From Aplysia californica (taxonomy: Eukaryota): a stretch of 64,000 nucleotides of DNA. Position numbers and translations under genes: made by a program. The first letter of the stretch is position 1, and the number at the start of each line of letters is the position of its first letter. Where the stretch lies: contig NW_004797931.1 of assembly GCF_000002075.1 (NCBI RefSeq), forward strand, positions 157,355-221,354, read 5' to 3'. The notes beneath the pieces were generated by a model. The model worked only from the letters and a program-made list of their open reading frames with translations. It was not told the origin of the DNA and did not search any database. Shown here piece by piece: positions 3,137 through 35,363 of the stretch.

Positions 3137-6100
3137 ATCTCCAATTATATATAATATCCCGAGGCGAAATAATCATCACTGGCTCTCAACTACATACCAA
3201 ACCTTTGAAATGTGTTCAGCATTTTTTTTATTCTTCTGAAAACCCGTAATGCAAACATACCTACATAATCGCGCAGAAACGGAGCACTCGTTCACCTCTT
3301 GAAAGATCAAAAAACTTTTCTGGCTGAATCCAGTATGTCCACCTCCAACTACATGGACCTTTCTTATGCTGATGAAGGCACCACAATCGATCAAATGCTG
3401 TAGAAATGTGTGCCGGGCCACTTTTAATTGTTCAAACGACCGATGTTATTGATTTAAAACTTGAATAGACTACACATTTTTGAAGAGATGCCGCGGATAT
3501 ATTAGCTTATTTCATGTTTGTTGGTTTACAAGCACTTCATACGAGGCACGTATTGATTGTTCAAACTTTACTGACTGCGGTAGATTCCAGTTTGATTCTC
3601 CGAAAGCACTTGAACTTTGTTTTGTTTGTGCAGTTCCCATGACTTTCCATCACCATTGCTCGGGGACTAGCTTGAAATAGGGTACTGGCTATTAGACAGA
3701 CGGTACACGGGCGTACCAAACCATACAGAATACAAGGACGCATGCAATCACTTACCACCTAATATTTATTGTGTGCTCGGGGCTTTGCATTGAGCCAACA
3801 CAACCAATTGATTTCCTTATTTTCATAGCTATCGATGGCGGATCGATTCGACCTTTGTGCTAACTTTCCCCGGGTATTGTCGGAAAGACGCAATGTCTCG
3901 TTAAGCCGGGCACTCTGGACACAGGCGTCTGTTGGAATGTTTGAACCTTCCATTACTGGAGTTTGTTCTAGCGCTTCTGCAGACACTTGAGGCAAACTGC
4001 AGACAGAAAAGGGACCAGGGAAATCCGAGAACCCACAAGGTTACTGTAGGCATTGTTGCGCGCCTGTCACTTTAAATGTCATTCAATAAAAGATGGAGGT
4101 AGTCATGCAGAAGTTTGATGATGATTTGTTCTGTTTGCAAAGTTACGAAATATGGTACCATTTACCTCTAAACAAACTGATGACGAATGACGCAAAACAA
4201 ACAGTAGGCCTTTCTTGGGAACAAAAATGTATTTGCATTTTATATTAGCTTATTTGAGCCTATAAAACATGCCTGTGCATAGGTACGCGAGAGAAAATAA
4301 ACGGGGTCATAAGTACGCAAATGCAAATACTTGTACACGCATAACATTAATTGGATCACTTTTGTTTCCTTCCAGCCTACAGACTGCAGTAAAAAAAATA
4401 ATAAGTTGCCGAATCAGAAGTTTACTGTTATTCATTTATATTTTTCTCTTCTTTTTTTTACTTTTGAAGGTAAAAAGGGGGAGGGGGTGAGGGTTGATGG
4501 GTTTTGGGAGGGAGGAAGGTCTTCGTTTTTCTTTTTCATTCTGTTTGAGTAAGGATCTAAATCGGTATCTGTTTGCGTTATGAAATGACCGCTTGTGAAA
4601 GCCGTTGTATGATTTTATTCGGCGCCATTTGCTTTTTTTCTGACAATCGTTAAACAAACAACAAGAAAATTGTACANNNNNNNNNNNNNNNNNNNNNNNN
4701 NNNNNNNNNNNNNNNNNNNNNNNNNNNNNNNNNNNNNNNNNNNNNNNNNNNNNNNNNNNNNNNNNNNNNNNNNNNNNNNNNNNNNNNNNNNNNNNNNNNN
4801 NNNNNNNNNNNNNNNNNNNNNNNNNNNNNNNNNNNNNNNNNGAGGTATTGTGGTGAAATTAGGCACTTGTCAAAATATGNNNNNNNNNNNNNNNNNNNNN
4901 NNNNNNNNNNNNNNNNNNNNNNNNNNNNNNNNNNNNNNNNNNNNNNNNNNNNNNNNNNNNNNNNNNNNNNNNNNNNNNNGGGCACTGTGTGGTTCCTAGA
5001 TCGATTATATTTTGCCAGACCGTGTCCGCGGTCGATATTTCGGCACGAAAGAGACAAGACTGGACGTTACAATATTATTATTGTATTCGGAAAAGGATAC
5101 TGGCCTACCTCACTGAGATATATATATATAAGATTTAATGTCACCAATTTACATGTTTGTTTGAGTAAAGAGTAGGACATCGATACGACTACTGTCATTT
5201 AAGTGTCGGGGAAAAGTTAAACAGAAAAACGGAAACAACAGAGGGAAAGGAAAATAGTAAGACATAGATCTACCAGTGGCACACTCCAATCACCCACAAT
5301 TTACAACAAGCATGAAAGACCTACAAATCTTGGTAAAAAGAACAGGTTGACAACAAAAAAACAAAAACACAGCAGCAGATTCTACAAACACCCGTTACCG
5401 TAGTTGGAAGAACCTCAAATAAAGAAAAGGAAAGAAATTAAGACACGTTCTTTGTGGGGCTAGGCCAACAATTACCAATTTATTTATTGCAAATAAACTT
5501 ATAATGCAGATATAATACACTGAAATTGATGTTGATGTGAAAGTAAAGGAGCCATAACTTAAAGAAGGAAAGTTGGAAGATGGAAGGGGATGTTGCATGA
5601 TTATAATGTTGTGGCGCACAAAAAAAATTCAAAGGTGGAGCACTTTACTTTGATGTAGGTGCTTTTACACCACCATTGACACAATTTAGATCGTTTTACG
5701 AGGCGGTTTCGAGCCTGCCTGATAGGGCCAACCCGGTTGGAGAGGCTAGGGACACAACGTCCCAGCAAAAAGTTCGAGATACTCGATTTAATTCTCGCTA
5801 CACGGGATTCGAACTCAGGTCTGCTCCGTGCGACGAAGAAGTGCCCAACCGCTACACCACAGACGTCGGTCGTGAAGAACTCTATCACTTTGTCCTGAGA
5901 TAGACCAAGAAAGGGCACGCGTATAACTCAGTTGGTGTCTTGCTGCCTTTTGGTGAAGATGACACTGTTTGAATCTTTTCTTTACATATGTGAAGCGTGC
6001 TTACAAAATGAGTAGCTTCTCCTATTCTATCCCCTTGGGAATAGGTACATCACGCTTATAGGTGGAGTTTTTAATATCTATAACTATGAAATCATAAAGG

Positions 6101-7407
6101 GCATGTTATACATTAAAAATATGACATCAATAAGACATCTGCAAATTTTACCCTTTTGTCGATTTTTTGTCAATATCTCCATTTGTGGATTGCGAGAAGT
6201 AACTCATTTTGTCAGCTCCTATCACATATAATACGGGCATTCAGAACTTGGGACGAAAGTAGAAAAAGTTGGGAGGGAGAGTTATTATAGATCCCTCTCC
6301 CACCTGGCTCAGGCCTATCGAAGATGGACGCTCAATCCAGAGGTCCTGCCTTTGAAACAAAAGAGTGTTGAAAGTTGCGCTGAACCCATACGGTGCCATA
6401 CCATAACATTGGTAAAAATGAAAAAATCAACCCAGGAAAAGAAGACTGACGCCAAAGTAAATAATAGGCCCTACATAATGTACACAAAAATGTAAACCCA
6501 GCTTAAGAGTTCCTGATGTGTTATTTCAACTTTGAACTTTGAAGTTGGAGAAATAGCATTGGCACCATCGCCGTGTCTCCTCACCTTCCCCAGGGTATAA
6601 TGTAAAGGGAATGGGCTTCAATATGATTATGTATTCTGACACACACATGAACACAAAAACTGAGCCACTCAGTTTTATTTGATCGGAAAAGTAAACACGT
6701 TGATATTGCAAGGACACAATGATTGCCATAAAATGTGAGGCAAAGCAATATCATAAGACAGAAATAGCACACGAATAGCAAGGCTTAGGCCCGAGAAAAG
6801 TTTTAGTGGCGCCCCCCACCGGCATATTGTTCAAGACAATTAAAAAGGAGCAACCGTGAGGAGTATAAAATGAAGAGTACATTCCCGGATCACGCAACTC
6901 GGAGAGGAAAAAAAGAAGGCGGGAGGGGGAGAAGGGGTATACAAACATTGAATACGAATGCTCCTTCACTCATGACTAAGTGCATGTAGTATGTAGCTAG
7001 AAATTGCTGAGAAAAATTGGATTGTAAGAACGTTTTAAACCCCCCCCCCCCCCCCCCCAACTGAATTTCGAATTGAAGGTGTAATTGTTTGTTTTAGTAA
7101 GGTTTTATGGCTCTCTCAACTGCATAAGGTCATATAATAAGCGCCAAGGGGTGGATGTCAAAAGAGAAGTCCAAACGGGGAATCAGGCTTACTTTGCTCA
7201 CCTTTCTAGCGTCAACAGCACAAAGTCTGCTGCAACTATCAAGGCACCCCAGAAACAGCAGTTCACAAGAAACACGACTTGCAAAAGAAGTAGAGGATAA
7301 GTGACGGTAGTAAGGAAGAGGAAAGAAAAAGCAGCAGTTTCCCCCTATGTTGTTCAGGCACAGTATGAGCATGGCATTGATAAATCAGCCCATTCACAAT
7401 TCTACTG

Positions 7408-7409
<2 letters not shown>

Positions 7410-7463
<54 letters not shown>

Positions 7464-7796
7464 TGCATTTATATAGCGCATATTTATGCTCAAGAGCATG
7501 CTCTATGCGCTTTACAACTATTATTACCCCAGCAGACCCTCTGAGAAGACACAGAAACATTCTCAGCTTCCGAGGAAGAATACAGTGCAAGCTGCGGATT
7601 TCACGCGCTCAAACACTATCAAACTGACAAGATCTTTCACTGTCTATAGCCGGGTACCCATTTCTACCTGGGTGAAGTGAGGAAAATTTGTGCAAAGTGC
7701 CTTTCCCAAGGACACAACGTCGGGCCCCTGACGAGATTCGAACCCACGACCTTGCGGTTGCGAATCCGAGAGCCTAACCACTAGACCACCGACGCC
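7410..7796 (-). mobile_element. tRNA-derived CORE-like SINE with L2-type tail and (ATT)n end
   Basis: A box TGGTCTAGTGG, B box GGTTCGAATC, central GTGTCCTTGGGAAAGGCACTT, tail matches the L2 3' end at 47180-47250; partial copy at 61790-61990. Confidence 0.85.
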
Positions 7797-10689
7797 ATGT
7801 TAATACCCCCCCCCCCCCTTGGGAATGGCTTAAAGACACTTCAGTCAGTAGCATTGCCTTGGGGGGGGGGGAGTTAAAAGTGTCCGAAAAATAAATGATT
7901 TAAGTCACATTTTGAAAAAAAAAAAATTCAAAAATAAGAGCGCTCATATGACCTTATGCAGTTGCGAGCGCGGTAAAACCCTGTACTACTACTACTATAA
8001 AAATAAGAGTCCTTCGTACATGTACATTATTTTGACACATGTTAGGGAAGACAATGCAACATAGCATTTGATTTGAATGAAATGACAGTATGACTTTAAC
8101 TTTAGATCTGAGTTTTGGACTTTACAAACTACCCAAACTTGGTAGAGCATGTATTTCATGCCTAAGTCCAACTGATTTTTTTTCTTACTTGACCTCAAAG
8201 TGACTTAGAGTAGACCCTTTATATTTCCTAGTATTCCAACTGCTTGCAAGGCGGATTGTTTAGACTGTATCTCTGAGAGCCAACCAGGGCTGCGTGGTCC
8301 CCATGACAATGAAATATAAGAAACCTGACTTTGGAACTAAAATAACTCAGGCTGGCAGAATGGCAAGATATGGATTGTTCAGATATGTCCCAGTCCCAGA
8401 AACAACGTCCAACTATTGGCAACGCTAAAAAGATGACCCCCATGAAAGCTCATCAAGCAACCTCACACTCACACTATTTCACTCAGCCGGAAATCACTTC
8501 TACTATTTCGGTCCAGTAGGGATTACAGAAAGCGTCGGAACTATTAAACCTATCGCTACCATTCGCACATTCTTTCTCCCACAATTTAAAAAAATGTTAG
8601 TAACGTAGTAGGAGTAAAGAAAAGTCACACTGACGATCACCCAGTGCTGTGAAAGAGCAAGATAGCCAGAAGCAGCAGAGAAAGAGCGCAGTAGAAGTAG
8701 AACATACCAGAGGCGCCTTCCTCGGCCATGCACTTTTAGTGAATGATCGCATGCCGCCACCATTCACGTATTATTTCTTTTCATGTCTATTGCCAAGTGC
8801 CGTTGTTCAGTAGGGTAAACTGAGGACAATGGGACCTAGTATCTTTCTTAGGGATACAACATACTACCAGGGAATGGACGTTTTTTGTTAGCCCATATCC
8901 TTCGTCTTGCCACTGGACTGGGTAACCAAAATAAGCATACATATATATAAAAATTTATATGTATATATTGCTGTTTCGGCTAGGTAGGCCTATATCACTA
9001 AGCACTCAATCAAAAACTATGAACTCCACGTAACTTGTACCTTTGGCCTTCGAAACTCAATAAATCTGAATGGAGAGGTTTTGTTTAAAAATTAAAGCGG
9101 CAGCAAAGGGCTGTGGTACACGTAATAATAACAAACAAGTGCTCATTCTTAAATCAAAGAATTAATTTGCGTGCCCGTATTGTTCATAGATTCTAATTTT
9201 TTTTAACTTGTAGCAGTAACACTGGGTGAAAGTAAGTAGATTTTTTAAAAGTAGGCCTACAGGTGACCTGCATTCTTGCATCTATCATCTATATATAGTT
9301 ATCTAAATCTGTCAATCTCATATTTCGCCCCGCTGTCACATTCTCGTACGTGAAATTTACTTTCGCGGGTTTAAAATACAGCGAGCTGTCGACCCCGCAG
9401 TACGTACAAGAACCCTCACTCGGGTCGATGTAATAATATAGTCTCAAAAATGGAAGTGCATGCAAGTGCAAGCCCATGCAAGCATACAAGTTCTCAGTGA
9501 GACAGCATTCACCGATTATGCTAATAATTGTGTCAGTCTGGCGTTAGCTTATGTTAAAGGGCGTGAATGTTGACATAGGGTGGAAGAAAGTCTAAGGAGC
9601 CGAGGGTATTCAGTTTGAATCAGTTCAGGAGCCTTGGTTTGATAATCGGCGAGCTGAGTCTGCACTTGACTTAGGCTATTGGCAAACTGACGTCGGGAGA
9701 CAAGGGGGAGAAAGTGCTACAGGACGTCATTTGAGTCAATTTGACAGAATGTCACAAACGTCACTGTCACTGGCAAGTGCGCTGTGTCCGTGAGCAAGGT
9801 CAGCTGTTTAAGGACGAGCAGCAGCAGGCTAAAGGCAAGGTTGCGGCACGTTTCAAACCATGATCATAATAAACAAATCAGAAACACGAATTGGCATCAT
9901 GTGTTTTAAAGTAATATAGCGAGCATATTGTTGATTGCCTTTTTAACTTTCAGACAAATAAAAAACAGATTGGCAGGATTAGAATAGAAGTTATTCAGTA
10001 CCTCAGAACAGCGATTCTTCAACTTCAAGCGTTGTCGAAAGACCAGAAAGTGTGTCCTCAAAGACTGAAACTGAAAGAGTTCACCTTTTTAAAAAAAGCT
10101 TTGCGCCAGCGGCGGCCAGCAATGGAAAATGAAAACCCACTCCCGGGAAAGACAATGCGTCGTGGGTTTTTCTCTTTTCTTTACTGTTGTTATATTTTGA
10201 GCTATATATTATAGGCCTGCGTGAAATCGCCCAGTTATAGTTGTCCACCATTTTCAGGGAACAAAATGACCCTCAACCTTTTGTAGTAGGGCCACACAGG
10301 CAGGATTTGTGAGTTATTCATGATTCATTCTCAATGAGCTGACTTCATCATTACCACCATCATCGTTCTTGTTAAGTAGAAGTAAAACATATGGAGCCAC
10401 GACATAATTTTGAAGAATCTACGGCATTGGACATATATTATTATTATCAAAACTTGTAAGATTTTTAAGGCTTCTTCGGGATCATTTGTAGAAAAAAAGA
10501 CACCATCATCATCAATTGTGTAGTCCCGTTGGCCGTTGCGGCGTCAAGTATGACTGTCCACTAATCTCTTCCACTCTCTTTTCATGTGTTGCTTGCCGCC
10601 ACAGCCAGTTATCAAGTTCTTTAAGGAAAAGAGGACTATGTAGATCAATCTGTCTTTGGTTTATATTTTTTAGGGGGGGGGGTGAAGTA

Positions 10690-24600: not shown

Positions 24601-27600
24601 CGAGAAACCTTTTCAGCAGAAGCCCCTTTTCCCCTTGCGAGGCGCATCCCTGGTAAGACATGGAAGTCTGTCACTGATGCGTGGAATGGCTACCACAGTG
24701 TGCCACTAAGAGAAGATGACAGACACCTCACTACTTTCATATTTCATAACCCCATTCGGGAGATGGGGGTACACTCACGCACCACAGGGTTTCCTTTCTT
24801 CAGGGGATGGATACAACAGACGTGAGTACGCGAGGTATCGCGAGTCCCTATATGCCTTGGATGGTGTCATCCTCTACAGAGATAGAATTGTCATACCATC
24901 TTCCCTAAGGAAGACCATTACTGAGGGCCTTCACCCTGCTCACCAAGGAGTCTCATCAATGGAGATATGGGCTCAGTCCATTGTGTTCTGGCCAGGAATG
25001 ACTAAGGACATACAGCATGTTCGAGCCAGATGCACGGATTGCAACAAGAATGCACCGTCTCAAGCCCAACTTCCTTCAAACCCTGCCCACCCACCTTCAA
25101 CCCCGTTCGAGAAAGTCTTTGCAGACTTCTTTGACTATGGAGGCTACCACTATCTGGTGATCGGTGACCGTCTGTATGGGTGGCCCGAGGTTTATTCCAC
25201 CCCCACAGGAAGTGCCCATGCTGGAGCAAGAGGCCTTATAGCCTGTCTACGGAAATTCTTCGCCACATTTTGGGTACCAGAGGAGTTGTCATCAGACGGC
25301 GGCCCTGAATTCACTGCCTGCCAGCCAAACAAAAAACTTCCTGTCCACATGAGGTGTACACCATAGGAAATCGTCCGCATACCACCCACAATCCAATGGG
25401 CGTGCTGAGGTAGCTGTCAAATCTGCCAAGCACCTTCTCAGTTCCAACATCAACCCCTCCGGAAGCCTCGACAGCGACAAATTCTTGAAAGCCCTTCTGC
25501 AACTTAGGAACACCCCAGACCCTGATTGCAAGCTTTCACCTGCCGAGATTGTCTTCGGGCATCCGATCAGAGACATGTTCTCTTTTGTGAATAGGCTTGA
25601 AAAGTTCTGTAATAAAGCCATACAGCCCATTTGGAGAACACAGCGGTTATAGAGCGCCCATTTAGTTTCGGCTGGCGCGAGGCAAGCAAGCCCGCGCTTC
25701 CCCAGGTCACGGGGTCATTTACCTGCGCCGCCGGGGATTTCCCTAATCAGCCGAACACCGGCAGCGCTCTTGTATTTTTTGCAAAGTTTACCAGCACAGT
25801 GAGCCAAAGCTAATGTAAGATGAATATTTTAATAAAGACCACGTAAATATTCAACATATTAAGGAAGAAAATGAAGAAATCGGAAGAACATGGTACATTA
25901 CACTTAAAAGCTGTGAAGTTCTCAAAAAGGGGACTTAATTTGATAAATGTGTCATGGGTAATCAATTATAAACATCGATTTAAATATGAATGCCCCCAAC
26001 GAATTCAATCAAATTTGCACACAGGACTGAGAACATAATGAAATTTGTACTGACAAAGGGGCATATGCACGAAGTTTCTGGATCCGTAATTATTCAGGTT
26101 TGAAGTTGATTTTTGCAATACTCTTGCTTTGCGACCTTGTTTTTTCATAGCGATATCCACGATACATGTAACTACAGGACAGATCTTTTCTTGCCGATAC
26201 ACTTATGAAAACACAACCTAAACACAAAATACAAAAAGAACACAATATTGCTGGACTGGAGGAATTATCTCATTTTTCCGCTGTAAGCTTTTGTCTTTTG
26301 ATGGGTGGTGCACACGACAGAGTAGCTCAGAGTGGGTTTGGACGTGTTGTGACTGCATGATTGTTTTGACGTGTTTTTCTTTGTCTGTTAGGCCACGGTT
26401 GCATGAATGAGATCACCCCCTTGCTCACAATGGAAGGCCATTCCAAACCCACATTTTTGTATCCAAGGAACGCAGTGTTTCTCAAGGATGTGTTGTTTGG
26501 GGATGACCTTTTCTTTTGATCGATTTTGATTGAGTAGCACATGTTTTACGGCACTATCGACTCAAGACCTTTTATTTACCAAATATGTTTCTGTATAAAG
26601 ACATATATCGTGTGATGCATGACTGAATATGTGGTATTCTCTCTAAAGTGATTGGCTTTCCATGTGCAATTACTGTGTGGATATCTTTGAAGGTGTCTTT
26701 TACGTGAACAAATTTCTCTCTCAGAACAATTAATGCAGTGTCTATTATGCTTTGATTTCGTGTACATGCAACTGTTCCTTTTGCTAAAAATGATGCTAGC
26801 TGTCTGTACACATGGGCTGTGATGAATTTATGGCAGTGGCTTCCTATAAATGAACGGCTGTTGTAGGCCTGTGGTGTGATGTTGTGTTGTTTGAGGATGT
26901 TATCAAATTCAGAGCAGGCAGGACTTGACCTTGGAATAAGCTCCTCAAACTCTAACTCTGACAGCTGATCATGTACACTAGAACCCTTCCTCTCAAATCT
27001 CTCTGCTTCTCGTGGATTATCCGACAAAATCTGACAGCCCTGTAACAATTGAATGTCCTCCTCGTTTTTTCCCAGCCCTCTTTCATTTTTTGCCATAGAT
27101 ATGCACATTTTGTCCTATTCCAGGCGTGCAATTCTCCATAGATTGATGGACCAGCTGTACATCTATATCATGTGCAGCCTCCTCAAGAAGGCGATGATGT
27201 TTGAGCACAATGCCCACCATATGATCATGTTGAGTGTGGCACTCCATGACAAAAATATTGTTAAAAATGATAACGAAAATCAGATGTAGTAGAGGCAAGA
27301 AAACTAAAAACAGCAAGAATGAATGTTCAGAGTGGTGGGTTGGTATTTTTTAAAAATCACAGAAAATCATAGAATAACTTCGTGCATTTGAAATTTGCAC
27401 ATGTAAATGAAAATTGTCACCACAGTTGATACATGAATTTCTGTTTAAATCGTTGGGGGCCGGATTGAAATATGGGTCATTCCACCCTTATGTGTACAAA
27501 AACGTGACATAGCACATCAAAATTCAAACTCAACTTGCTGCATTCCTATTTAAGGATTGTTTTGTTTAATATTGTAACGATCTTCATAGAAAATCTCAGA

Positions 27601-30600
27601 CCTGTACGGTGAACCATGTTTTAGAAAATTGATGTTTTCATTATGCAACACTCATTGTCAGAATTGTGACGTGGACGTAACAAAATTGCCAATAAATAAC
27701 AAATGCAATGTATTTTTCAACTGGTAATGTCAAATGTCCTTTTATTAAGCCATTAGGAAATGGAAAATATGAGAAATTTTAAAGAATTATTATAAGAAAT
27801 GGTAATTTCAAAAACAAAATGTCAGAAATGTGACTGGACAAAATTAGAAGAAAAAAAAGTTGACAAAAAGTTTTTACACAGGATGCAGCTGTAAGCAAAT
27901 CTGACCGAAAACCTACTTAAAGGGTCCATTAGTAAAACATTAAAATGACTTGTAAAGAAAAACCCATGAAAAATCTGAATGAATCAGTCTTAATGGGGGG
28001 AAATGGTTTTTGTCCTAATTGTGACATGGACGAAGTAAAACAAATGTTTTTGTAAATAAATTAATAGTTAATGCTTTAAATCTCTCAAAACCCATGGACT
28101 TCCTTAGTTCACAGGTTGACACAATGTGAAAAGTTTTTTAAAAACCTGAAAAAATCAAATGGAAAAAGAGAGACGAAAAACGAATATTTTCGTTGCAAAT
28201 GTGACGGATAAAAAAACAAGACGATACAAAGGTCAGCTTTTCTTACACCTTATATTTATCAGTACGGTACTAGCATTGTAAGGAGCTAACACTCAATTAT
28301 AACACAATTAAAATGGGAATAAACATTAAACCTACGTCAATTTATCAAGTCGTACAGTCAAGAATTTCCATCGTAGAGTAAGGGTAATTCTTAAAATATG
28401 CCTATATGGTTCCACATGGACAAATTGTGTTAGAAAGTTCCGTATTGAGATAGGGAAAGAAATATTGAAGGGCCTGTATGAATGTTTAGGTCACTTTTGA
28501 TATGTTTTAGAATCTAGAGGTCTTTTGCTAGTGAATACCACAGTCTTTGTGACTTGTCCCACCCCTGTCTCTTGACTTCGAAGTGAGATATTGTCGTTGC
28601 TATTTTTTCTCCTGCAGAAGCAGTCGAGAAACTAAAATGGAATCAACTAAAGCATTGCCAAATACTGGCATAAATGATCTTATGGCTTTCATTCAACTGA
28701 CAAGATTTTTTAAAAATGAAATTTAAAATAAAGACAAAATATTGGGTTTAAGAAACATTCTCTGCGGGGCATCAAGGGTTGGTGCATCTACCAAAGAAAA
28801 AGTCCACTGCTGGCCAGGAAAGGTACTGTCCATTTTTTCTACAAAACTTTATCTGGGCTTCACCCTCTTCAGTTGCAAGGACCTGTGGAGGAGACAAATC
28901 AAAATTCAATGAAGTCTTTCAAAGTACAGATGAAACAAAAAAGGTAGACTAAAGAAAGTTGCACGTCCGTAGTTCCTCTTTGAAATTAAATACAATTTTA
29001 TTTGTGACCAGTAGTGACCGTTGTCTGTGATGCAATGGCTAATCTCTTCGCCTCTTACGCAGAAGAACCGAGTTTGATCCCACATGGGGACAAGCATCTA
29101 TCTTTCTACTGGGATTCGTCCCTCTCACCCCAGGTTGGCCCTGACAGGCAGGGTCGAATGCGAAGGATGTAAAACAAAAAACCAAACAAAACCAGTACTG
29201 TTGTCAAAGGCCCATGTATCTTTGTCATTGATGCAGTTGCTGTCATGGTCGGCCTACCGGTATCTCATTCTTTGCTTATAAATATCAATGCGTGTACTTA
29301 CTTCAGCCAATGGATCACTGAGACGAAACTTGAAAGATAGTGAATGGATAGAGGAAATTCCATAAACAAGCTGATCCTTCATGCATACATATGGGCCTAC
29401 ATATTTTAATTTATGAAATGATATGTTTCATACAGGAACATAGCAAGACAGCCAACCTTCTTTCTACACCTAAAGAGCCACTTAGTTTATTTTACCACTA
29501 CACAAGAAGAAAGAAAAGAAACTAAACCCACTATATCAATCATTATTTCTTTATAGTTCTAGCCCCAAATAGTTTTTCATTCTTTGGTAGCTTCTAGACA
29601 AAGTGAAAGCCTTTTTTCTCAGAAAGCTGAAAGTACATAATACCAGACAATACACCACAAAAAAAAACCCAAAATATAACAGTATTATTTAGGGCTAGTC
29701 ACTCAGAACCACACACTACATGTTTATTTTTTATCCCAAGAGATGGTGCAATAGCACAAGATGAATATGAAAACTCATTTGCCAGAATTGTGACACTGGA
29801 CAAAAAGAAATTCTATGTCCAGTCACAATTGTAACATTTGTGTTAAATGAAGCCAGAACAAAGGGAGCATTTTACTGTATGAACCTTTCATGTGTAAGTT
29901 CTTTAATAATCACTGGTGAACAATCGAAAACTTTGTAGAAAGCAAAGTATGTGAAGATGGAATGCTGTTTTCATGTTCTAATCAGAAATGTGACACTGGA
30001 CAAAGTGTTGCCTTTTTTTTCCATTGTCACATTTTTGACAAACTACTGAAAACGCTTGCAATTCAATGCAATATGTCTTAATAAAGTAGAAAAATCTGGA
30101 ATTATATCTCCAACACAGCTCCCCTTGTGAATTGAAACTGAATTATGAACAAGTGGAGATCAATAATGAAAAAAACCCACTACTTTGTGTGTGTGAAACG
30201 TGACATGGACAAAAATTAAAATTGTGTCCAGTCACAGTTGCAACAGTTATAGTTGAAAATTCAAACGTTTGGAGAGGAAGACTAATCTTTTTTTTTTCAG
30301 AATTAATTCTGCTACTTATTTACTACTATTCATGGATGAAATGACTGCAATTATGTCTTAATTTATAGATAAATGATACATTTTTTTTAAAGCCACAATC
30401 GTGACTTGGGACAAAACAATGTGGTTGTGTCTTTTATGTCCATGTCACGTTTTTAATATTTTTCACACTAAAATCTATTTTAGACTAGAATTCTAAGTCA
30501 AAAGCTAGGTTTAAGAGAAAAACAAGAATTTGTCCGTTATAGTTGAACTGTCTGCTGTTAGCTATATCGCAACTAAGTCTGGACTTGGCTGAGAAGAGAT

Positions 30601-33600
30601 ATTTTGTTTCAAACGGCCCTCAGACATAAAAATTGTTTTTGTCCACAGTGTAATGTCACGTTTGTCACATAAAGTAGCAATGACCACGAAAATCCTTTTT
30701 TTGCCAGAAAATGTTTGCAAATAGGTGCATTTTGTAGCTTTATCTTCACTGAGCATAGAACTTTTTGAATTTTTAAAATCCATCAATAAACAAAAAAGTT
30801 ACGGATTTTTTAATCAATTAATTTCTGGTACACTTTTATATAATGAAAAAAACCCAAAATATGGGACGTTCTTTGGTGAGTTTTGAGACATATTCGTCAT
30901 AACTCTCTCATTTCTCTGAGTATTTAAAAGAAACTTGGCAACCCAGTACATTTTCTAGTGCAGAATCTAGTCCTGCTTTCAGATTTTTCATAGCTATCCC
31001 ATTTTTTGAGTTATGAAGACGTTTATAGGTAAAAATGTTGGCCTTTTTCGGTGCGTTTTGAGACAATATTTGTCATAACTCGCCTATTTCTTGGAATATG
31101 TAAATGAAACTTGGCAGTCTAGTACATTTTTTAATGCAGAATTTAGTCATGCAGTCAGATTTTTAATATCTGTCATACTTTTTGAGTTGTAAAGACATTA
31201 ACAGGTAAAAAAGTGGCGTTCTTTACAGATTTACAAAGATTATCAGTCATATGTTCTCCCAAAGTCATGATATTTGAATGAAACTTAGGCAACATAAAAG
31301 GTTCTTCCTTGCCAAGCAATATTCTGGATCAATTTGTCACAAAAATGTAAGTAGAGAGCTACTAATAAATCCAGTTTTGTACTAGTAAAAGCATGCATAC
31401 TTTGTTATAGAAAATAAGATCGTCTCTGTGTATATCCATTGTTGGACAGTGTCCTATTGTGTGGTAGATTAAGATGCGTTCAGATAAAATAGTTTACAAG
31501 TCATGGGAATATTTCGCATGTGTAGGCTACAACTCATACAATAAATGTAACATATTTACACCCCCCCCCCCCCTTCTCTCTCTCTCTCTCTCTCTCACGC
31601 GCGCGCACTCACGCACGCACGCACGCGTGAACGATAACAATGTATAAACGGGACTATCTTCCCAGACTGGACTAAATAAGTACCATACTCTTTAATAACA
31701 ATCTTAATGCCTCACTTTTCCCAAACAGAGCACACAGGACGAGTCCAAGTGTGTGCTTTCCCAAGAGGGGGGAATAGGCTTTCATAACGCAAACACAATG
31801 CCATACCACTTCTCAAGATGTTTCCTTTTCTGTTTCTATTCTTCTGTCATGCAATCAAGCAAATAAAAATGACTACATCTATTGTATTGTGACTAAAATG
31901 CAACAAAAACGCAAGTTATCAAGGCCCCCGTTTAGTTTTCAAGTATCCTTCCCCCCCTTTCCATTTCACATAAGCGGGGCCTCGTTTGTAGCGCCCGAGG
32001 CGACCGATGGCTGATGACGTCACTCAGTGGAAATTTCCACGCCGCCGGCCGTTCACCCAGCATGCGCAAATGGCAATGTCGCTTTTTTCCTTAGTTACTC
32101 CCACATTTTTAAAGATTACGCCAAAACCGCTAAACACAGAAGCATGAAATTTTAAGGGAATAAAGAAAAATGGTGTACAACGTATCAGTCAGTTTGACAA
32201 ATCACAGCTCCGAAAAACCTTCAAAGCGCACCACATCAACCACTTTCGCAAACGTTTTCGACTGCTTCTAGGATGGGTACAATGTTGTCAAACTGCATAC
32301 TACGAGATTGACCTCTTTTCTGATTGGTTGCCAAGTTTCATTCATATCCATTCACGAGAAGCGGCGTGAGAGCGAGTTGAAGACAACAACCTTTGCGTTA
32401 GTGCGTCCCATGAAACACCCCCGCTGCGGGGGCCAAAAATCGGCAGAACAAAATGCGCTCGGTGGGCATTGCTACATAAAGCCACATCCAACATATTCTT
32501 AACCTGAGAATGTCTTGATAAACTCTGGGTGTAGCACTGTAGACCTATTTTGAATATTGTCAAAACGGAATAATCACGAACGATTGTTGTAGACTCTATG
32601 TTCAATAAGATTTGTGGCAAACCGCAGCAAATGTGACTCTGGACATAAATAGTGTTTATGTCCAGTTTGGGGGGAACTGCTAGAAAGTAGCCACTACCTT
32701 TAAAAATTCTCACACGGAACTCGTAGTATTAAACAATTCAAATCACCAATAGAAAAAAAATCACAAAAAAGCTATAGTAAACTTCGTAGTAAGTATAATT
32801 TTGCTGATAATATAATCATTTTTAGTCAGAATCGGGACATTTCATCCAACTTGTCAGAAACGTGACAATGACAAAAAGTCTGGACAAAAACAGAAACCAA
32901 CCTGCCATGGGGCTCTCCATTGTAAAATGGCTGCGCCGAAAGCAAAAATTGCTGGATGAAGGGAAGTGCTCTGCCGTCTGTGACATAAAACGCATACAAA
33001 AGTCAACTCGTCATGAAAACAGATAGCGTCCTAAACGTGACATCGGGAGGAAAAACGAAGTGGTTCATTCCCCGGTCAAGAAGAACACGCGCATACGCGT
33101 TTCGTGGCGTTGGTTCTGACCTCATATTAGAAAGCGTTGCACATCCTTTTGAGGAAATAAACTGTTTTGTACACATGATTTGAATCTTGAATGTAATTGA
33201 GTCTTGTATTTCACGTTGATTTGGGACATAAGAGGTCACGTTTCTGACACATTTTTCTAATGCTTATTTTGCTTCAAAAGACCTTTTTTTTTTTATTGCG
33301 TATATTGTATCTTGAAAAAGATTCATTTGTCTAAATGGCAAATATTTCATCAAGCAAATGAAAGCAAGGAGAAAGGAACAGGCCAACTAATTTCTAACCC
33401 ACCTTATGCATGTCACATTTTTTCCTTCAATTTTTTCCCTTTTACGTGAGTTAAAAGGCTGGTATCTAATTAATCCCATGTTGTGCTTAAATTCCAGATA
33501 GGACCAGGTTCTTGAACCATCTATCTGGCTTCTGGAGATAGTTTCCACATCAAATCTTTATTTCCACTTATTTTATGGGCTAATTTCAAAAGCATATAAA

Positions 33601-35363
33601 AACGTACACGTTAGGGTGGAATGACCCATATCTAAATCCAAACTGAAAAAGTTCTAAACATTGAAGATGCCAGTTTGAAAATCATCGACTTACTTAAATC
33701 CCTTGTAAAACTGATATAATCGGACTTACAAGAAAACAAGTTATACCGGCCTACAGGTCAAACATAGCACGTTACAATGAAATCTCAATCGGCCTTGTAG
33801 CATTTATAGTTTCAGAGTTAGGAGGCTTTCAATTTGCACTAAAACGCCATATTTACTACTGCCCCGGCACAGGAGGAGTGGCGCTGCGGTCACCCCAATT
33901 AACCCCTCTGACAAGTGATTTATGACTACGCGCTGGGCTGTCGGGCGGGGCGGGCAAGGTGGTGAGGATGGTCGGGGAGGAACCGGGGAAGGAAAACTAA
34001 GTGAGCGGTCTGGACGGTATTTTATCCGCTGTGAGAAAGGCATGGGCAGCCAAGGAAACCGCTACGGACAAGGTTTGTGAAAACATCTGAGAAGTTCAAC
34101 GAGCACTCAAAAAACCTGCCCAAGATGTCCATTGGGGACAGATGTTTTGTCCAGAACCAGACTGGCAGTAGCCCTAAAAGGTGGGACCGAGCAGGATTGG
34201 TTGTCGAAACCGGCCCCAATGACCAATACATGGTCAAGATTGATGGCTCAGGGCGGCTGACGTCAACAAACCGGCGCTTCCTTCGCCAGTTCCAACCTGC
34301 CACTTCGACCATACAACCGGCACCGGCACGTAACAGCCCAAATGACTTTGAGGTTACTCTGCCTTTGGAGGAGGAGTTCCATACGGGACAAGAGTATGCG
34401 ACTGAGCCAGTCAATGAGGAGCAAAGGATTGCCCCAAGCCCTTCCCCTCAGCCCCAACCCCCAGAGGCACCTCAGGAGGCAAAGAAAAGTCTTTCCGCAG
34501 CCCTGAAACGCCTTCTCCCACACAATAAAGAGGGGTTACAGGAAGCGGTCAAACCTCAGGAGCAGGGGGGGGGAGAAAACCAAGGGGGGTTAGGAAAGAT
34601 CTGAACATGCCATGAACTTGGGGGGGGGGATGTATGGTTATTTGTTATATGATATTAGTTCATGTTCTCTGTACGTTATGTGGTGTACCCCATATTATTT
34701 CATGTTATGTTGTACCTGTATCATTCATTGTCCCTGTTAATCCGTGTTCACAGATGAAATGATCATCTACCGTTTATAATAAATGAACTACACTGAGAAG
34801 TATTTCTTCACTAATTAATTAAAAGCAATCTTGATCGAGACTGAAGTATACCTTTTTCGCTCAAAGAACTGGTGACTTTTCCCAGCCTTCAAATATCCTA
34901 CAAAGACGAATTTTTCCTGAAATTAAATCAATCGTACAACAAAAAAAACCCTCAGATCCCATCACTTTTCTAAAATTCAGTGGTAATTGTATTTCATTGT
35001 ACAACGTTCTATGTAAAGCAGTTTCATAAAACCTGGATTCTCTTGAATCTAATCGATAATTTAATATATATTGCAATTAAAATGCACTTTGCACCTGACA
35101 GATGTTTTTTATCTACAAAAGCAATGATTAAAAATTCCAACATACGATCCATCCAGAGCCCTCACTGCATCTTCTGCATCTCTGCTGTCTTCAAACTCGA
35201 CAAACGCAAAGCCTGGAGGCTTACGGGCTACCCATACATTGCGCAGCTGGCCATATTTGGAGAACTTTTCTTCAAGTTCTTGCTTTGCGCAGCCATAGCC
35301 CAGATCGCCTACATACACCTTGCAGTCCAAGTTCCAGTCCCGCATGGGAGCGTTACGAGACAT
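15628..35363 (-). CDS. SRSF3: SR-family splicing factor, SRSF3/SRp20-Rbp1-like, 142 aa; join(complement 35146..35363, 22197..22328, 17633..17704, 15628..15634)
   Basis: Spliced translation [22 protein letters not shown]...[33 protein letters not shown]|[17 protein letters not shown]...RRSR|[24 protein letters not shown]|S*. It has the typical SRSF3/7-Rbp1 RRM and an RS tail with no CCHC knuckle. All introns are GT-AG and phase-compatible (218+132+72+7=429 nt). Confidence 0.92.
16828..17198. mobile_element. Tc1/pogo (Tigger-like) MITE
   Basis: TA|CAGTGGAAACC...ATAACAGG and CCTGTTAT...GGTTTCCATTG|TA. Confidence 0.75.
17633..17704 (-). CDS. SRSF3: SRSF3-like coding exon 3 (RS domain)
   Basis: CTTTTCTTCTGTACAG|G acceptor, encodes [23 protein letters not shown], donor AG|GTGAGT; 72 nt. 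Confidence 0.9.
21052..21600 (-). other. Alternative premature-stop (poison) exon of the SRSF3-like gene; tandem acceptors at 21600 and 21576
   Basis: Acceptors TCGCAG|GGTC and GTGCAG|GGTT, in-frame R(VSVIILCR)[20 protein letters not shown] with TAA at 21513-15, C/A-rich body, candidate donor GG|GTGAGT at 21050-51. Same relative position as the vertebrate SRSF3 poison exon. Confidence 0.75.
22197..22328 (-). CDS. SRSF3: SRSF3-like coding exon 2 (end of RRM, start of RS region)
   Basis: Acceptor TTTCAG|C at 22329-30, encodes [19 protein letters not shown]...SGRRSR, donor AG|GTTTGT; 132 nt, phase 2/2. Confidence 0.93.
22610..23170 (-). repeat. Dispersed retroposed repeat (copies at 7085-7850 and 57065-57360) with a second family inserted at 22675-22842 (copies at 11610-11780, 11975-12138)
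   Basis: Multi-copy similarity within the window and a shared 3' tail ...CATATGACCTTATGCAGTTGCGAGTGCCGTAAAAC. Confidence 0.7.
23209..23388 (+). repeat. 5' LTR
   Basis: Direct repeat of 34631-34810, 177/180 identical. Confidence 0.95.
23476..25638 (+). pseudogene. Gypsy gag-pol remnant (Cys/His motif, protease, partial RT, integrase core), frameshifted; the integrase C-terminus resumes at 34034-34604
   Basis: ORFs 23476-24156, 24337-24825, 24716-25366 and 34077-34604. Removing the insert and one TSD restores ...[11 protein letters not shown]... Confidence 0.88.
26398..27240 (-). pseudogene. Decayed Chapaev-type transposase C-terminal half
   Basis: Motifs [28 protein letters not shown] and [37 protein letters not shown] (RAG1/Transib-like HxxxxH...EQGxE segment), with stops and frameshifts. 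Confidence 0.78.
27474..33627 (-). mobile_element. Sola-like DNA transposon nested in the Chapaev element
   Basis: TIR GGGTCATTCCACCCT(T/A)A(T/C)GTGTAC at both ends, 4-bp TSD ATAT, many dispersed TGTGAC(A/T)TGGAC-type subterminal motifs, and a transposase C-terminal-like remnant ([17 protein letters not shown]) at ~28760-28885. Confidence 0.75.
30675..32474. mobile_element. 1.8-kb non-autonomous TIR element with 7-bp TSD (hAT-like TAG termini), nested in the Sola-like element
   Basis: TAGCAATGACCAC...GTGGGCATTGCTA termini; TSD CATAAAG at 30668-74 and 32475-81. Confidence 0.8.
34631..34810 (+). repeat. 3' LTR
   Basis: Direct repeat of 23209-23388, preceded by a polypurine tract. Confidence 0.95.
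35146..35363 (-). CDS. SRSF3: SRSF3-like coding exon 1 (RRM; exon spans 35146-35375, ATG at 35363)
   Basis: Acceptor TTTCAG|CGCC at 35376-77, RNP motifs KVYVGDL and PPGFAFVEF, donor TC|GTATGT at 35144-45. Confidence 0.95.

What the first reader, a model, noticed from the sequence alone, without database searches (positions are those of the whole stretch)
25639..34033. Chapaev transposon with asymmetric, RSS-like bipartite ends (one helical turn offset)
Seen in sequence: both ends start with CACAGCG, one mismatch from the V(D)J RSS heptamer CACAGTG. A second conserved block AGA(G/C)CGC(C/T)CA(T/C)TTAGTTT (15/18 identical) begins at position 13 on the left end (CACAGCGGTTAT-) but at position 23 on the right end (CACAGCGGATAAAATACCGTCC-), exactly 10 bp further in. 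Established: CAC termini with a 4-bp TSD mark Chapaev elements, which are related to Transib/RAG1, and 12/23 RSS spacers differ by about one helical turn. Inference: this family may use a 12/23-like asymmetric end-pairing rule. The second block is not the ACAAAAACC nonamer, so this is analogy or distant homology.
Basis: partly seen in the sequence, partly recalled or inferred. Interest (0 to 1): 0.8.

Follow-up and report, generated by a model that had tools for sequence, protein, structure and literature searches.

The report
Chapaev transposon with unequal RSS-like ends
This is a broken copy of a known kind of jumping gene (Chapaev, a cousin of the antibody-gene enzyme RAG1) whose two ends carry the same two short signals spaced 16 and 26 bases apart, and this one-helical-turn difference recurs in every related family whose ends I could resolve, recalling the 12/23 signals that RAG1 reads.

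Summary
Window 25639-34033 is bounded by CACAGCG tips and a 4-bp duplication (AGAA). An inner TTAGTTT block starts at position 24 of one end and 34 of the other.

It is not an autonomous element. It is a 2.24-kb internally deleted copy of a Chapaev-type DNA transposon, split by an unrelated 6,154-bp nested insertion and sitting in a retrotransposon integrase gene.

The 10-bp offset is not a private indel:
- All 30 ends of each kind sampled in this family keep it.
- Five TSD- or boundary-verified further families (two in this genome, three from other assemblies) have the block at 24-25 on the 3' end and 34-36 on the 5' end. Two less secure families agree.
- Tips and TTAGTT are conserved, while the spacers are about 40% identical.
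- Genome-wide, spacers of 16 and 26 nt give 540 and 520 matches, against about 77 per intermediate spacing.

The transposase model matches the RAG1 core (Z 29). Its N-terminus matches the RAG1 N-terminal region, and a weakly NBD-like domain sits in the equivalent place.

A rule requiring one short and one long end is plausible but untested. Similar asymmetry is published for Transib and RAGL elements. I found no report for Chapaev. Earlier notes of this scan describe the same layout on other copies in this genome.

The parts
25635..25638 (.). Left copy of the 4-bp target-site duplication (AGAA)
   Evidence: The same 4 bp follow the right end at 34034-34037.
25639..25645 (+). Terminal heptamer CACAGCG of the 3' end (the end downstream of the transposase gene, which reads on the - strand)
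   Evidence: Identical tip in 30/30 sampled copies apart from point changes.
25646..25661 (+). 16-nt spacer of the short (3') end
   Evidence: Length is fixed within the family. Sequence is only about 38% identical between families.
25662..25668 (+). Inner block TTAGTTT, positions 24-30 of the short end
   Evidence: TTAGTT is 100% conserved across the five families in the 24/34 register.
25639..27473 (-). 3' portion of the internally deleted Chapaev copy, up to the nested insertion
   Evidence: blastn against 2.2-2.4-kb copies at 97-99% identity. Corresponds to L078:2510-4048 of the full-length relative.
26572..27108 (-). 178-aa ORF, a remnant of the C-terminal part of the transposase
   Evidence: tblastn against the full-length transposase. 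151 matches in the genome. No Pfam hit on its own.
27474..33627 (.). Nested, unrelated 6,154-bp non-coding DNA element with its own terminal inverted repeats, flanked by the 4-bp duplication ATAT (27470-27473 and 33628-33631)
   Evidence: (inverted repeat I1). Uninterrupted copies read straight through this site.
33628..34033 (-). 5' portion of the Chapaev copy (upstream of the transposase start)
   Evidence: Corresponds to L078:6014-6673.
33994..34000 (-). Inner block TTAGTTT, positions 34-40 of the long (5') end
34001..34026 (-). 26-nt spacer of the long end
   Evidence: Length is fixed in 30/30 copies. Sequence is about 40% identical between families.
34027..34033 (-). Terminal heptamer CACAGCG of the 5' end
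34034..34037 (.). Right copy of the target-site duplication (AGAA)
24716..25366 (+). Host of the insertion: integrase ORF of a retrotransposon. The frame resumes after the element at 34077-34604.
   Evidence: Pfam Integrase_H2C2, E 3.6e-11.

Best explanation
Window 25639-34033 is a non-autonomous, internally deleted copy of a Chapaev-superfamily cut-and-paste DNA transposon. It was later split by an unrelated nested insertion.

Its ends are bipartite. Each has a terminal heptamer (CACAGCG, where cleavage occurs) and an inner TTAGTT(T) block. The two are separated by a spacer whose sequence is free but whose length is fixed: 16 nt at the 3' end and 26 nt at the 5' end.

This difference of one helical turn is an inherited, selectively maintained feature of the clade (shown).

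The element is moved in trans by a transposase of about 940 aa. That protein has a RAG1-like catalytic core and a RAG1-like N-terminal zinc domain (shown). It also has a three-helix domain in the place of RAG1's nonamer-binding domain (weakly supported).

Inferred mechanism: the catalytic core engages the heptamers, and the NBD-like domain, probably as a dimer on a flexible linker, engages the two TTAGTT blocks. The cleavage-competent synaptic complex would then be intrinsically asymmetric and would prefer one short and one long end, as RAG does with 12/23 signals.
For: Boundaries and TSD:
- Family A (the window's family) has 15/15 perfect 4-bp TSDs.
- Family B has two TSDs. In addition, contigs of four public runs join the exact empty site, skipping the 4105-bp element plus 4 bp.
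- Families C, D and E each have a matching TSD.
- Family F boundaries come from five contigs with different flanks.

Position of the TTAG block at the 3' / 5' end:
- A, B, C, D: 24/34.
- E: 25/36.
- F: 24/35.
- G: 24/34 and H: 25/34, both less secure.
- The long end is always upstream of the ORF.

Transposases of these families are only 33-55% identical.

Conservation profile: tip 0.86-0.89, spacer 0.38-0.40, TTAGTT 1.00, beyond the block 0.22-0.28.

Genome-wide counts: spacer 16 gives 540 matches (control 77), spacer 26 gives 520 (control 350), and the nine spacings 17-25 give 693 together (control 1236). The listings reveal further families with the same layout. By eye, about 41 convergent pairs within 5 kb on contigs C1-C46 are all short plus long.

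Protein:
- The AF2 model has pLDDT 85.
- Foldseek's 49 significant hits are all RAG1, RAGL or Transib.
- VIA gives Z 29 over about 460 residues to the RAG1 core, and some alignments extend into the RAG1 NBD.
- The sequence profile hits RAG1 residues 99-196 at E 5e-6.
- Invariant D, D, E and C-x2-C / H-x4-H residues are present.
Against: - No experiment or natural test of end pairing exists here. Every non-autonomous family could simply have inherited one end of each kind from its deleted parent, so the all-heterologous pairs count as roughly 6-7 family-level events, not about 41.
- The isolated NBD-like domain matches the RAG1 NBD only at Z 3.8 (rank 2 of 48,161 chains). This is below the level at which fold matches are trustworthy, and Foldseek found nothing.
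- The offset is 9-11 rather than a single value.
- The control count for spacer 26 is high (350).
- The inner block is not the RSS nonamer.
- The elements encode no RAG2-like partner.
- Ends of several relatives could not be resolved (L081, L083, L084, L090-L098, L100, L101), so symmetric families may exist unseen.
- Polarity could not be checked for the extra Aplysia families seen only in the pattern lists.
Confidence: 0.55

Rival explanations
1. The length asymmetry is real and conserved, but there is no pairing rule. On this view the extra ~10 bp at the 5' end is an additional copy of a ~10-bp A-rich unit, serving as an extra binding or bending site, an end-identity mark for ordered cleavage, or a regulatory site near the promoter. 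The transposase would tolerate any combination of ends.
For: - In two families the long end looks like the short end plus one more ~10-11-bp unit: family B and a family seen in the pattern lists.
- Indels inside any transposase-binding end are likely to be selected against, so a fixed length does not by itself prove a pairing rule.
- Unequal spacing between the terminal repeat and the transposase site is also known in Drosophila P elements (from memory), where it marks end identity.
Against: - The apparent repeat period differs between families (9 in A, 11 in B), while the net offset stays at 10. This points to selection on total length rather than on the unit itself.
- No short/short or long/long pair was seen among about 41 pairs.
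- The RAG1-like architecture makes an asymmetric synapse a natural reading.
Confidence: 0.35
2. The 10-bp offset is a private indel or a chance resemblance in this one family and has no wider meaning.
For: Within family A all copies are 97-100% identical, so their agreement alone is uninformative.
Against: - Six families with verified boundaries, with transposases 33-55% identical and drawn from at least four different assemblies, share the layout and the polarity.
- Spacer sequences have diverged to about 40% identity with no net length change.
- Genome-wide counts peak at spacers of 16 and 26 nt.
Confidence: 0.02
3. The element belongs to another superfamily (canonical Transib, CACTA/EnSpm or Chapaev3) and not to Chapaev proper.
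For: The core fold is RAG1/Transib-like. CAC tips are shared by the whole CMC/Transib group.
Against: - The TSD is 4 bp with no target consensus. Transib makes 5 bp and Chapaev3 makes TWA 3 bp (PMC4079192, PMC3014272).
- The protein carries the N-terminal RAG1-like 'Chapa' domain, which canonical Transib lacks (PMC4411706).
- Pfam DUF1280 is found in all 100+ relatives.
Confidence: 0.05

Closest known systems
Chapaev superfamily DNA transposons, including N-RAG-TP of Aplysia californica (Kapitonov & Jurka 2007; Panchin & Moroz 2008; discussed in PMC4411706, PMC8355894 and PMC4079192)
   Same: - 4-bp TSD and 5'-CAC...GTG-3' tips.
- A single DDE transposase with C-x2-C / H-x4-H zinc ligands.
- An N-terminal 'Chapa' domain homologous to the RAG1 N-terminal region.
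   Different: The accessible literature does not describe bipartite ends or a conserved length asymmetry for Chapaev (one search found no paper). The original Repbase Reports could not be read, so prior mention cannot be excluded.
Transib families whose 5' and 3' termini resemble RSS12 and RSS23 (Kapitonov & Jurka 2005, PMC1131882)
   Same: - Heptamer, variable spacer and second conserved block.
- Some families have ends whose spacers differ by about one helical turn.
- RAG1-like transposase core.
   Different: - Transib makes 5-bp TSDs and has an A-rich nonamer-like block.
- Most Transib families are symmetric (23/23-like), and the asymmetric ones have the short end at 5'.
- Here the TSD is 4 bp, the inner block is TTAGTT, spacers are 16/26, the long end is at 5', and all resolved families are asymmetric.
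RAGL-A transposon of Ptychodera flava, and some RAGL-B elements, with a 10-bp TIR spacer asymmetry (bioRxiv 10.1101/2023.08.20.553239)
   Same: - A 10-bp length asymmetry between the 5' and 3' TIRs.
- A conserved heptamer and an AT-rich distal block.
- An NBD in the transposase.
   Different: - RAGL elements carry a RAG2-like gene and make 5-bp TSDs.
- They have a TR2 region next to the heptamer and a GRPR/K motif in the NBD.
- The Chapaev elements have one ORF, and their consensus reads KTGGQP...PRK at the corresponding place.
V(D)J recombination signal sequences and the 12/23 rule
   Same: - The CAC-initiated heptamer is one base from CACAGTG.
- The spacer is sequence-variable but fixed in length.
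- The two spacer classes differ by 10-11 bp.
- The distal block sits at positions 24-30 / 34-40, against 20-28 / 31-39 for the nonamers.
   Different: - The inner block is not ACAAAAACC.
- Spacers are 16/26, not 12/23.
- A requirement for a heterologous pair is not demonstrated.
- These are transposon ends, not signals of a host gene.

Membership tests
Chapaev superfamily (Chapaev proper) | 3-4-bp target-site duplication | tested here: met
   - Perfect 4-bp TSDs in 15/15 family A copies.
- Matching TSDs in B (two copies), C, D and E.
- Exact empty site for a B copy in four public runs.
Chapaev superfamily (Chapaev proper) | Terminal inverted repeats with invariant 5'-CAC ... GTG-3' tips | tested here: met
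   All 16 ends of families A-H start with CAC.
Chapaev superfamily (Chapaev proper) | DDE transposase with the conserved C-x2-C and H-x4-H residues of the CMC/Transib group | tested here: met
   In the 49-sequence alignment D480, C570 and C573 are invariant. D551, H859, H864, E881 and E885 are at least 90% conserved. The model superposes on the RAG1 core at Z 29.
Chapaev superfamily (Chapaev proper) | N-terminal 'Chapa' zinc domain shared with the RAG1 N-terminal region | tested here: met
   Profile against PDB sequences: RAG1 residues 13-106 of chain 21wb_A, or 99-196 of full-length RAG1, at E 5e-6. Some relatives carry Pfam PF12560, RAG1 importin-binding.
Chapaev superfamily (Chapaev proper) | Phylogenetic placement with reference Chapaev transposases (Repbase) | not testable with these tools
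Chapaev3 subgroup | [quoted passage not shown] | tested here: not met
   TSDs here are 4 bp with no consensus and ORFs are about 900-1040 aa. The definition is taken from PMC4079192 and PMC3014272.
Canonical Transib | 5-bp TSD | tested here: not met
   The TSD is 4 bp in every verified copy.
Canonical Transib | RAG1-core-like transposase fold | tested here: met
   HzTransib chains match at Foldseek E 1e-8 and VIA Z 16-25. RAG1 chains score higher.
12/23-type recombination signals (RSS-like system) | CAC-heptamer plus a second conserved block, separated by a spacer of free sequence and fixed length | tested here: met
   Identity is 0.86-0.89 at the tip, 0.38-0.40 in the spacer, 1.00 at TTAGTT and 0.22-0.28 beyond it.
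12/23-type recombination signals (RSS-like system) | Two spacer classes differing by about one helical turn, one of each per element | tested here: met
   The offset is 10 or 11 in six verified families, and 9-10 in two others. Genome-wide counts peak at spacers 16 and 26.
12/23-type recombination signals (RSS-like system) | Nonamer of ACAAAAACC type | tested here: not met
   The inner block is TTAGTT(T) in all families.
12/23-type recombination signals (RSS-like system) | Efficient cleavage only with one short and one long signal (the rule itself) | not testable with these tools
   The only evidence is indirect: no short/short or long/long convergent pair among about 41 pairs read by eye.
12/23-type recombination signals (RSS-like system) | Nonamer-binding domain in the recombinase | tested here: inconclusive
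   Three helices (residues ~313-361 of the family B protein) lie directly N-terminal to the core, where the RAG1 NBD lies. Whole-model alignments reach RAG1 residues 390-409. The isolated domain (pLDDT 92) finds the RAG1 NBD 3gnb_A at rank 2 of 48,161 but only at Z 3.8, and Foldseek finds nothing.
RAGL transposons | Convergent RAG1-like and RAG2-like genes within the TIRs | tested here: not met
   Full-length elements are about 4.1-4.2 kb with a single long ORF.

The most novel reading that the evidence does not exclude
A bipartite end with two spacer classes one helical turn apart, read by an NBD-bearing RAG1-like transposase, would be a general and ancestral property of the Chapaev branch, and therefore probably of the common ancestor of Chapaev, Transib and RAG. 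On this reading the geometric basis of the 12/23 rule predates both the capture of RAG2 and the Transib/Chapaev split. Chapaev transposases would enforce a '16/26 rule' that can be studied with a single protein.
Probability: 0.3. Interest if true: 0.8.

Novelty: new variant of a known kind. Interest (0 to 1): 0.6.

Why it matters
How the 12/23 rule of V(D)J recombination arose is an open question. Current discussion rests on a few Transib and RAGL elements with unequal ends.

Here a third and more distant branch of the same superfamily shows three things together: a RAG1-like core, the RAG1-like N-terminal domain, and a length asymmetry of one helical turn that has persisted through deep divergence of both protein and spacer sequence.

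If the asymmetry is functional, it gives a simple system for testing how spacer asymmetry is sensed. The system needs only one protein, has no RAG2 partner, and includes recently active families with intact ORFs in a laboratory mollusc.

If it is not functional, it shows that such asymmetry can persist without a pairing rule. That would weaken arguments that infer the rule from TIR structure alone.

Tried and rejected
- **Genome letters ran out.** Further Aplysia families were therefore seen only through pattern-match listings, and their polarity could not be checked.
- **Ends not resolved.** Neither motif-plus-TSD scanning nor short-word inverted-repeat search resolved these loci:
  - L081 (Elysia): a 5' candidate with the block at position 35 and no 3' end found.
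  - L083, L084 and L098.
  - L090-L097, which are overlapping pieces of single loci.
  - L100, which is truncated with a degenerate tip.
  - L101, where only a 5' candidate at position 34 was found.
  - They are neither support nor counter-examples.
- **Weaker families.** G (L102) and H (L099) have no matching TSD, probably because the metagenome contigs are chimeric. I count them as weak.
- **Failed look-ups.** Nucella and Hydra proteins (P0063, P0110) were not on record, and P0112 returned no DNA. RING-bearing and cnidarian Chapaevs therefore stay untested.
- **178-aa window ORF.** It has no Pfam hit on its own.
- **5-bp TSD reading rejected.** Reading the window copy as GAGAA with a shortened right tip was considered, but 14/14 other copies fit 4 bp only.
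- **A-run not general.** The AAAA run at positions 11-14 of the long ends of A, B and C does not hold in D-F.
Full report
**1. What is at the coordinates**

The + strand at 25639 and the - strand at 34033 both begin with CACAGCG. The 4 bp outside them are AGAA on both sides.

TTAGTTT lies at positions 24-30 of the left end and 34-40 of the right end.

An offset scan that assumes nothing finds +10 as the best register for the inner 24 nt (15/24 matches). Only 5 of 2000 shuffles do as well.

**2. The 8.4 kb are a nest, not one element**

Each 200-bp end has at least 40 matches at 97-100% identity in the genome. That genome has 927,310,431 bp in 4,332 contigs. From memory these figures match the Aplysia californica assembly; I did not verify this with a tool.

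Fourteen complete copies could be assembled from the fetched loci. They are 1.6-2.4 kb long, and all 14 have perfect 4-bp TSDs with no target consensus.

The window copy aligns to these copies over 25639-27473 and 33628-34033. Between those stretches sits a 6,154-bp insertion (27474-33627). It has its own 36-nt inverted termini and a duplicated ATAT, and no ORF longer than 123 aa.

The whole element interrupts a retrotransposon integrase ORF (Integrase_H2C2, E 3.6e-11).

**3. The autonomous relative and the polarity of the ends**

The 178-aa ORF in the window copy (26572-27108, - strand) has 151 matches in the genome. One of them lies in a 993-aa frame.

That locus (L078:2510-6673, 4,164 bp) is 92-94% identical to the short copies. 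It carries a 789-aa ORF followed, after a single TAA, by a 166-aa ORF. The short copies lack L078:4049-6013, the middle of the gene.

This full-length copy keeps the same two kinds of end. However, its 3' tip is mutated and it has no matching TSD. A search with the deleted middle part found no second family A copy. The source of transposase for the recent burst is therefore not in the assembly.

The long end lies upstream of the transposase start, and the short end lies downstream of the stop.

**4. Is the offset private?**

No. Within family A, 30/30 sampled 3' ends and 30/30 sampled 5' ends have identical spacing. These copies are young, so that alone says little.

The informative comparison is between families:

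| Family | Source | Identity | TTAG at 3' / 5' end | Boundary evidence |
|---|---|---|---|---|
| A | window, Aplysia | reference family | 24 / 34 | 15/15 TSDs |
| B | three 4.1-kb copies, intact 906-941-aa ORFs | ~39% aa to A | 24 / 34 | TSDs ATTC and GTCT |
| C | deletion derivative into which an A copy had inserted | distinct family | 24 / 34 | TSD GAAG |
| D | L079, another assembly | 55% to B | 24 / 34 | TSD CGCT |
| E | L082, another assembly | 42% to B | 25 / 36 | TSD AGAT |
| F | five marine-metagenome contigs | 42% to B | 24 / 35 | contigs diverge exactly at both CAC tips |
| G | L102, metagenome contig | 37% to B | 24 / 34 | no matching TSD; weaker |
| H | L099, metagenome contig | 33% to B | 25 / 34 | no matching TSD; weaker |

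In every family the long end is the one upstream of the ORF.

The unbiased offset scan gives +10 or +11 as the best inner register for A, B, C, D and E. This is individually significant for A, C, D and E. It is the second-best register for F.

Across the five families in the exact 24/34 register, mean pairwise identity is as follows:
- 0.86-0.89 in the heptamer
- 0.38-0.40 in the spacers
- 1.00 in TTAGTT
- 0.22-0.28 beyond the block

This is the signature of two recognition elements held at fixed distances by a spacer whose sequence is largely free.

**5. Genome-wide view**

Counts for the pattern CAC-R-G-C-K, N(k), TTAGTT in the genome:

| Spacer k | Matches | Reversed-pattern control |
|---|---|---|
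| 16 | 540 | 77 |
| 26 | 520 | 350 |
| 17-25 (nine spacings together) | 693 (about 77 each) | 1236 |

The listings show further families with the same plan:
- An abundant family of about 1.56 kb at 24/34.
- A family at 24/33.
- A family at 24/34 whose long end is the short end plus one clean extra 10-bp unit. It also has partners at position 25.
- Another family at 24/34.
- An E-like family with the block at 25.

I read the lists for contigs C1-C46 by eye. I found about 41 convergent pairs within 5 kb. All were short plus long, and none was short plus short or long plus long.

Because deletion derivatives inherit one end of each kind, this amounts to roughly six or seven independent family-level observations, not about 41.

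**6. An independent check of boundaries**

I laid contigs of four public runs (kind uncertain, guessed RNA) on a family B copy with 100-bp flanks. In all four runs a contig joins position 4263 to 8373. It skips 4,109 bp, which is the 4,105-bp element plus one TSD copy, and 4 letters fit both sides.

That is the exact empty site. It confirms the tips from which the positions 24 and 34 are counted. It also shows that this insertion is absent from those samples or alleles, so the family moved recently. Contigs also tile the whole element in these runs. Whether that reflects transcription cannot be decided from contigs.

**7. The protein**

A word-index search found 114 relatives. Almost all carry Pfam DUF1280, and a few also have RING fingers or the RAG1 importin-binding family. 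Named hits come from sea slugs, periwinkle, dog whelk and Hydra.

Evidence from the 49-sequence alignment and the models:
- The alignment has invariant or near-invariant D480, D551, E881/E885, C570, C573, H859 and H864 (family B numbering).
- From memory of RAG1 numbering (D708, C727, C730, H937, H942, E962), the D-to-C spacing of 19 residues and the H-x4-H motif about 20 residues before the E are the same.
- The profile matches the RAG1 N-terminal region at E 5e-6.
- The AlphaFold model of the family B protein has mean pLDDT 85, with the core above 90.
- All 49 significant Foldseek hits in the PDB are RAG1, amphioxus RAGL or HzTransib.
- VIA-align gives Z 29, 459 residues at 4.5 A, model 365-930 on RAG1 477-1028. 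It gives Z 25 to BbRAGL and to HzTransib, and Z 11 to the next fold, the P element transposase.
- Several alignments extend to model residues 301-304 against RAG1 390-409, which is the nonamer-binding domain.

Folded alone, residues 260-370 have pLDDT 92. This domain model finds the RAG1 NBD crystal structure at rank 2 of 48,161 chains, but only at Z 3.8. Foldseek finds nothing. I call the NBD homology suggestive, not shown.

**8. Mechanism**

- Shown: cut-and-paste element with a 4-bp TSD, bipartite ends, a conserved length asymmetry with fixed polarity, and a RAG1-like transposase.
- Inferred: the core binds and cleaves at the heptamers. The NBD-like domain binds TTAGTT. One extra helical turn on the 5' end keeps the block on the same face of the DNA but 34 A further away. 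The paired complex would then be asymmetric and may demand one end of each kind.
- Main rival: the asymmetry is maintained for another reason, such as end identity, an extra protein site or expression, and no pairing rule exists.

**9. Comparison with what is known**

- Chapaev hallmarks (3-4-bp TSD, CAC/GTG tips, CMC-type DDE) are met. Chapaev3 (TWA, 3 bp) and Transib (5 bp) are excluded by the TSD (PMC4079192, PMC3014272).
- Kapitonov and Koonin place Chapaev within the Transib superfamily and describe the shared Chapa domain (PMC4411706).
- N-RAG-TP from Aplysia is the published precedent for the N-terminal homology (cited in PMC8355894).
- Length asymmetry of about 10 bp is published for several Transib families (PMC1131882, section 9) and for RAGL-A/B transposons (bioRxiv 10.1101/2023.08.20.553239).
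- I found no paper linking Chapaev with heptamer and spacer structure. The Repbase Reports that first described Chapaev are not in the library.
- Three earlier notes of this scan (s1-680731, s1-691460, s1-680787) describe the same long/short layout on other copies in this genome. They are the same observation on other DNA, not independent evidence.

**10. Verdict**

The conserved 16/26 asymmetry in the Chapaev branch appears to be a new variant of a feature known from its Transib and RAGL relatives. The functional rule remains to be tested.

Noticed in passing
window 27474-33627: A 6,154-bp non-coding element is nested inside the Chapaev copy. Its inverted termini begin GGGTCATTCCACCC, it has a 4-bp duplication ATAT, and it contains many internal short inverted repeats built on a GTGACA...TGGACAAAA motif. 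Its superfamily was not determined.
   Followed up: partly
L078:2510-6673 (G000 contig C289): This is the only full-length family A copy found. It is 92-94% identical to the young 2.3-kb copies, has a TAA where the derivatives encode Tyr, has a mutated 3' tip and has no TSD. The transposase source for the recent burst of at least 40 deletion copies is therefore missing from the assembly, or another family supplies it.
   Followed up: partly
L074:4268-8372, L075:4604-8706, L076:4685-8792: Family B has three copies that are 98.5-99.3% identical, with uninterrupted ORFs of 940, 941 and 906 aa. For the L074 copy an exact empty site is present in four public runs, so this family may still be active.
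   Followed up: partly
Pfam PF06918 (DUF1280) on L078:3696-6062:- residues 376-565: This 'domain of unknown function' covers the N-terminal half of the RAG1-like catalytic core, including the first catalytic Asp. It is present in almost all of the 114 relatives found. It could be annotated as a Chapaev/RAG1-like transposase domain.
   Followed up: partly
L076:4685-4691, and several rows: Tips alternate between CACAGCG, CACGGCG and CACAGTG among copies. One CpG deamination turns the family's heptamer into the exact RSS heptamer CACAGTG.
   Followed up: no
G000 C22:1055979 and C22:1056576: Two long (5'-type) family B ends lie in the same orientation, 597 bp apart. This may be a partial tandem duplication or an aberrant transposition product.
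   Followed up: no
control counts: The reversed-pattern control for the 26-nt spacing is unexpectedly high (350, against 77 for the 16-nt spacing). Some other repeat family presumably matches the reversed pattern by chance. I did not examine this.
   Followed up: no
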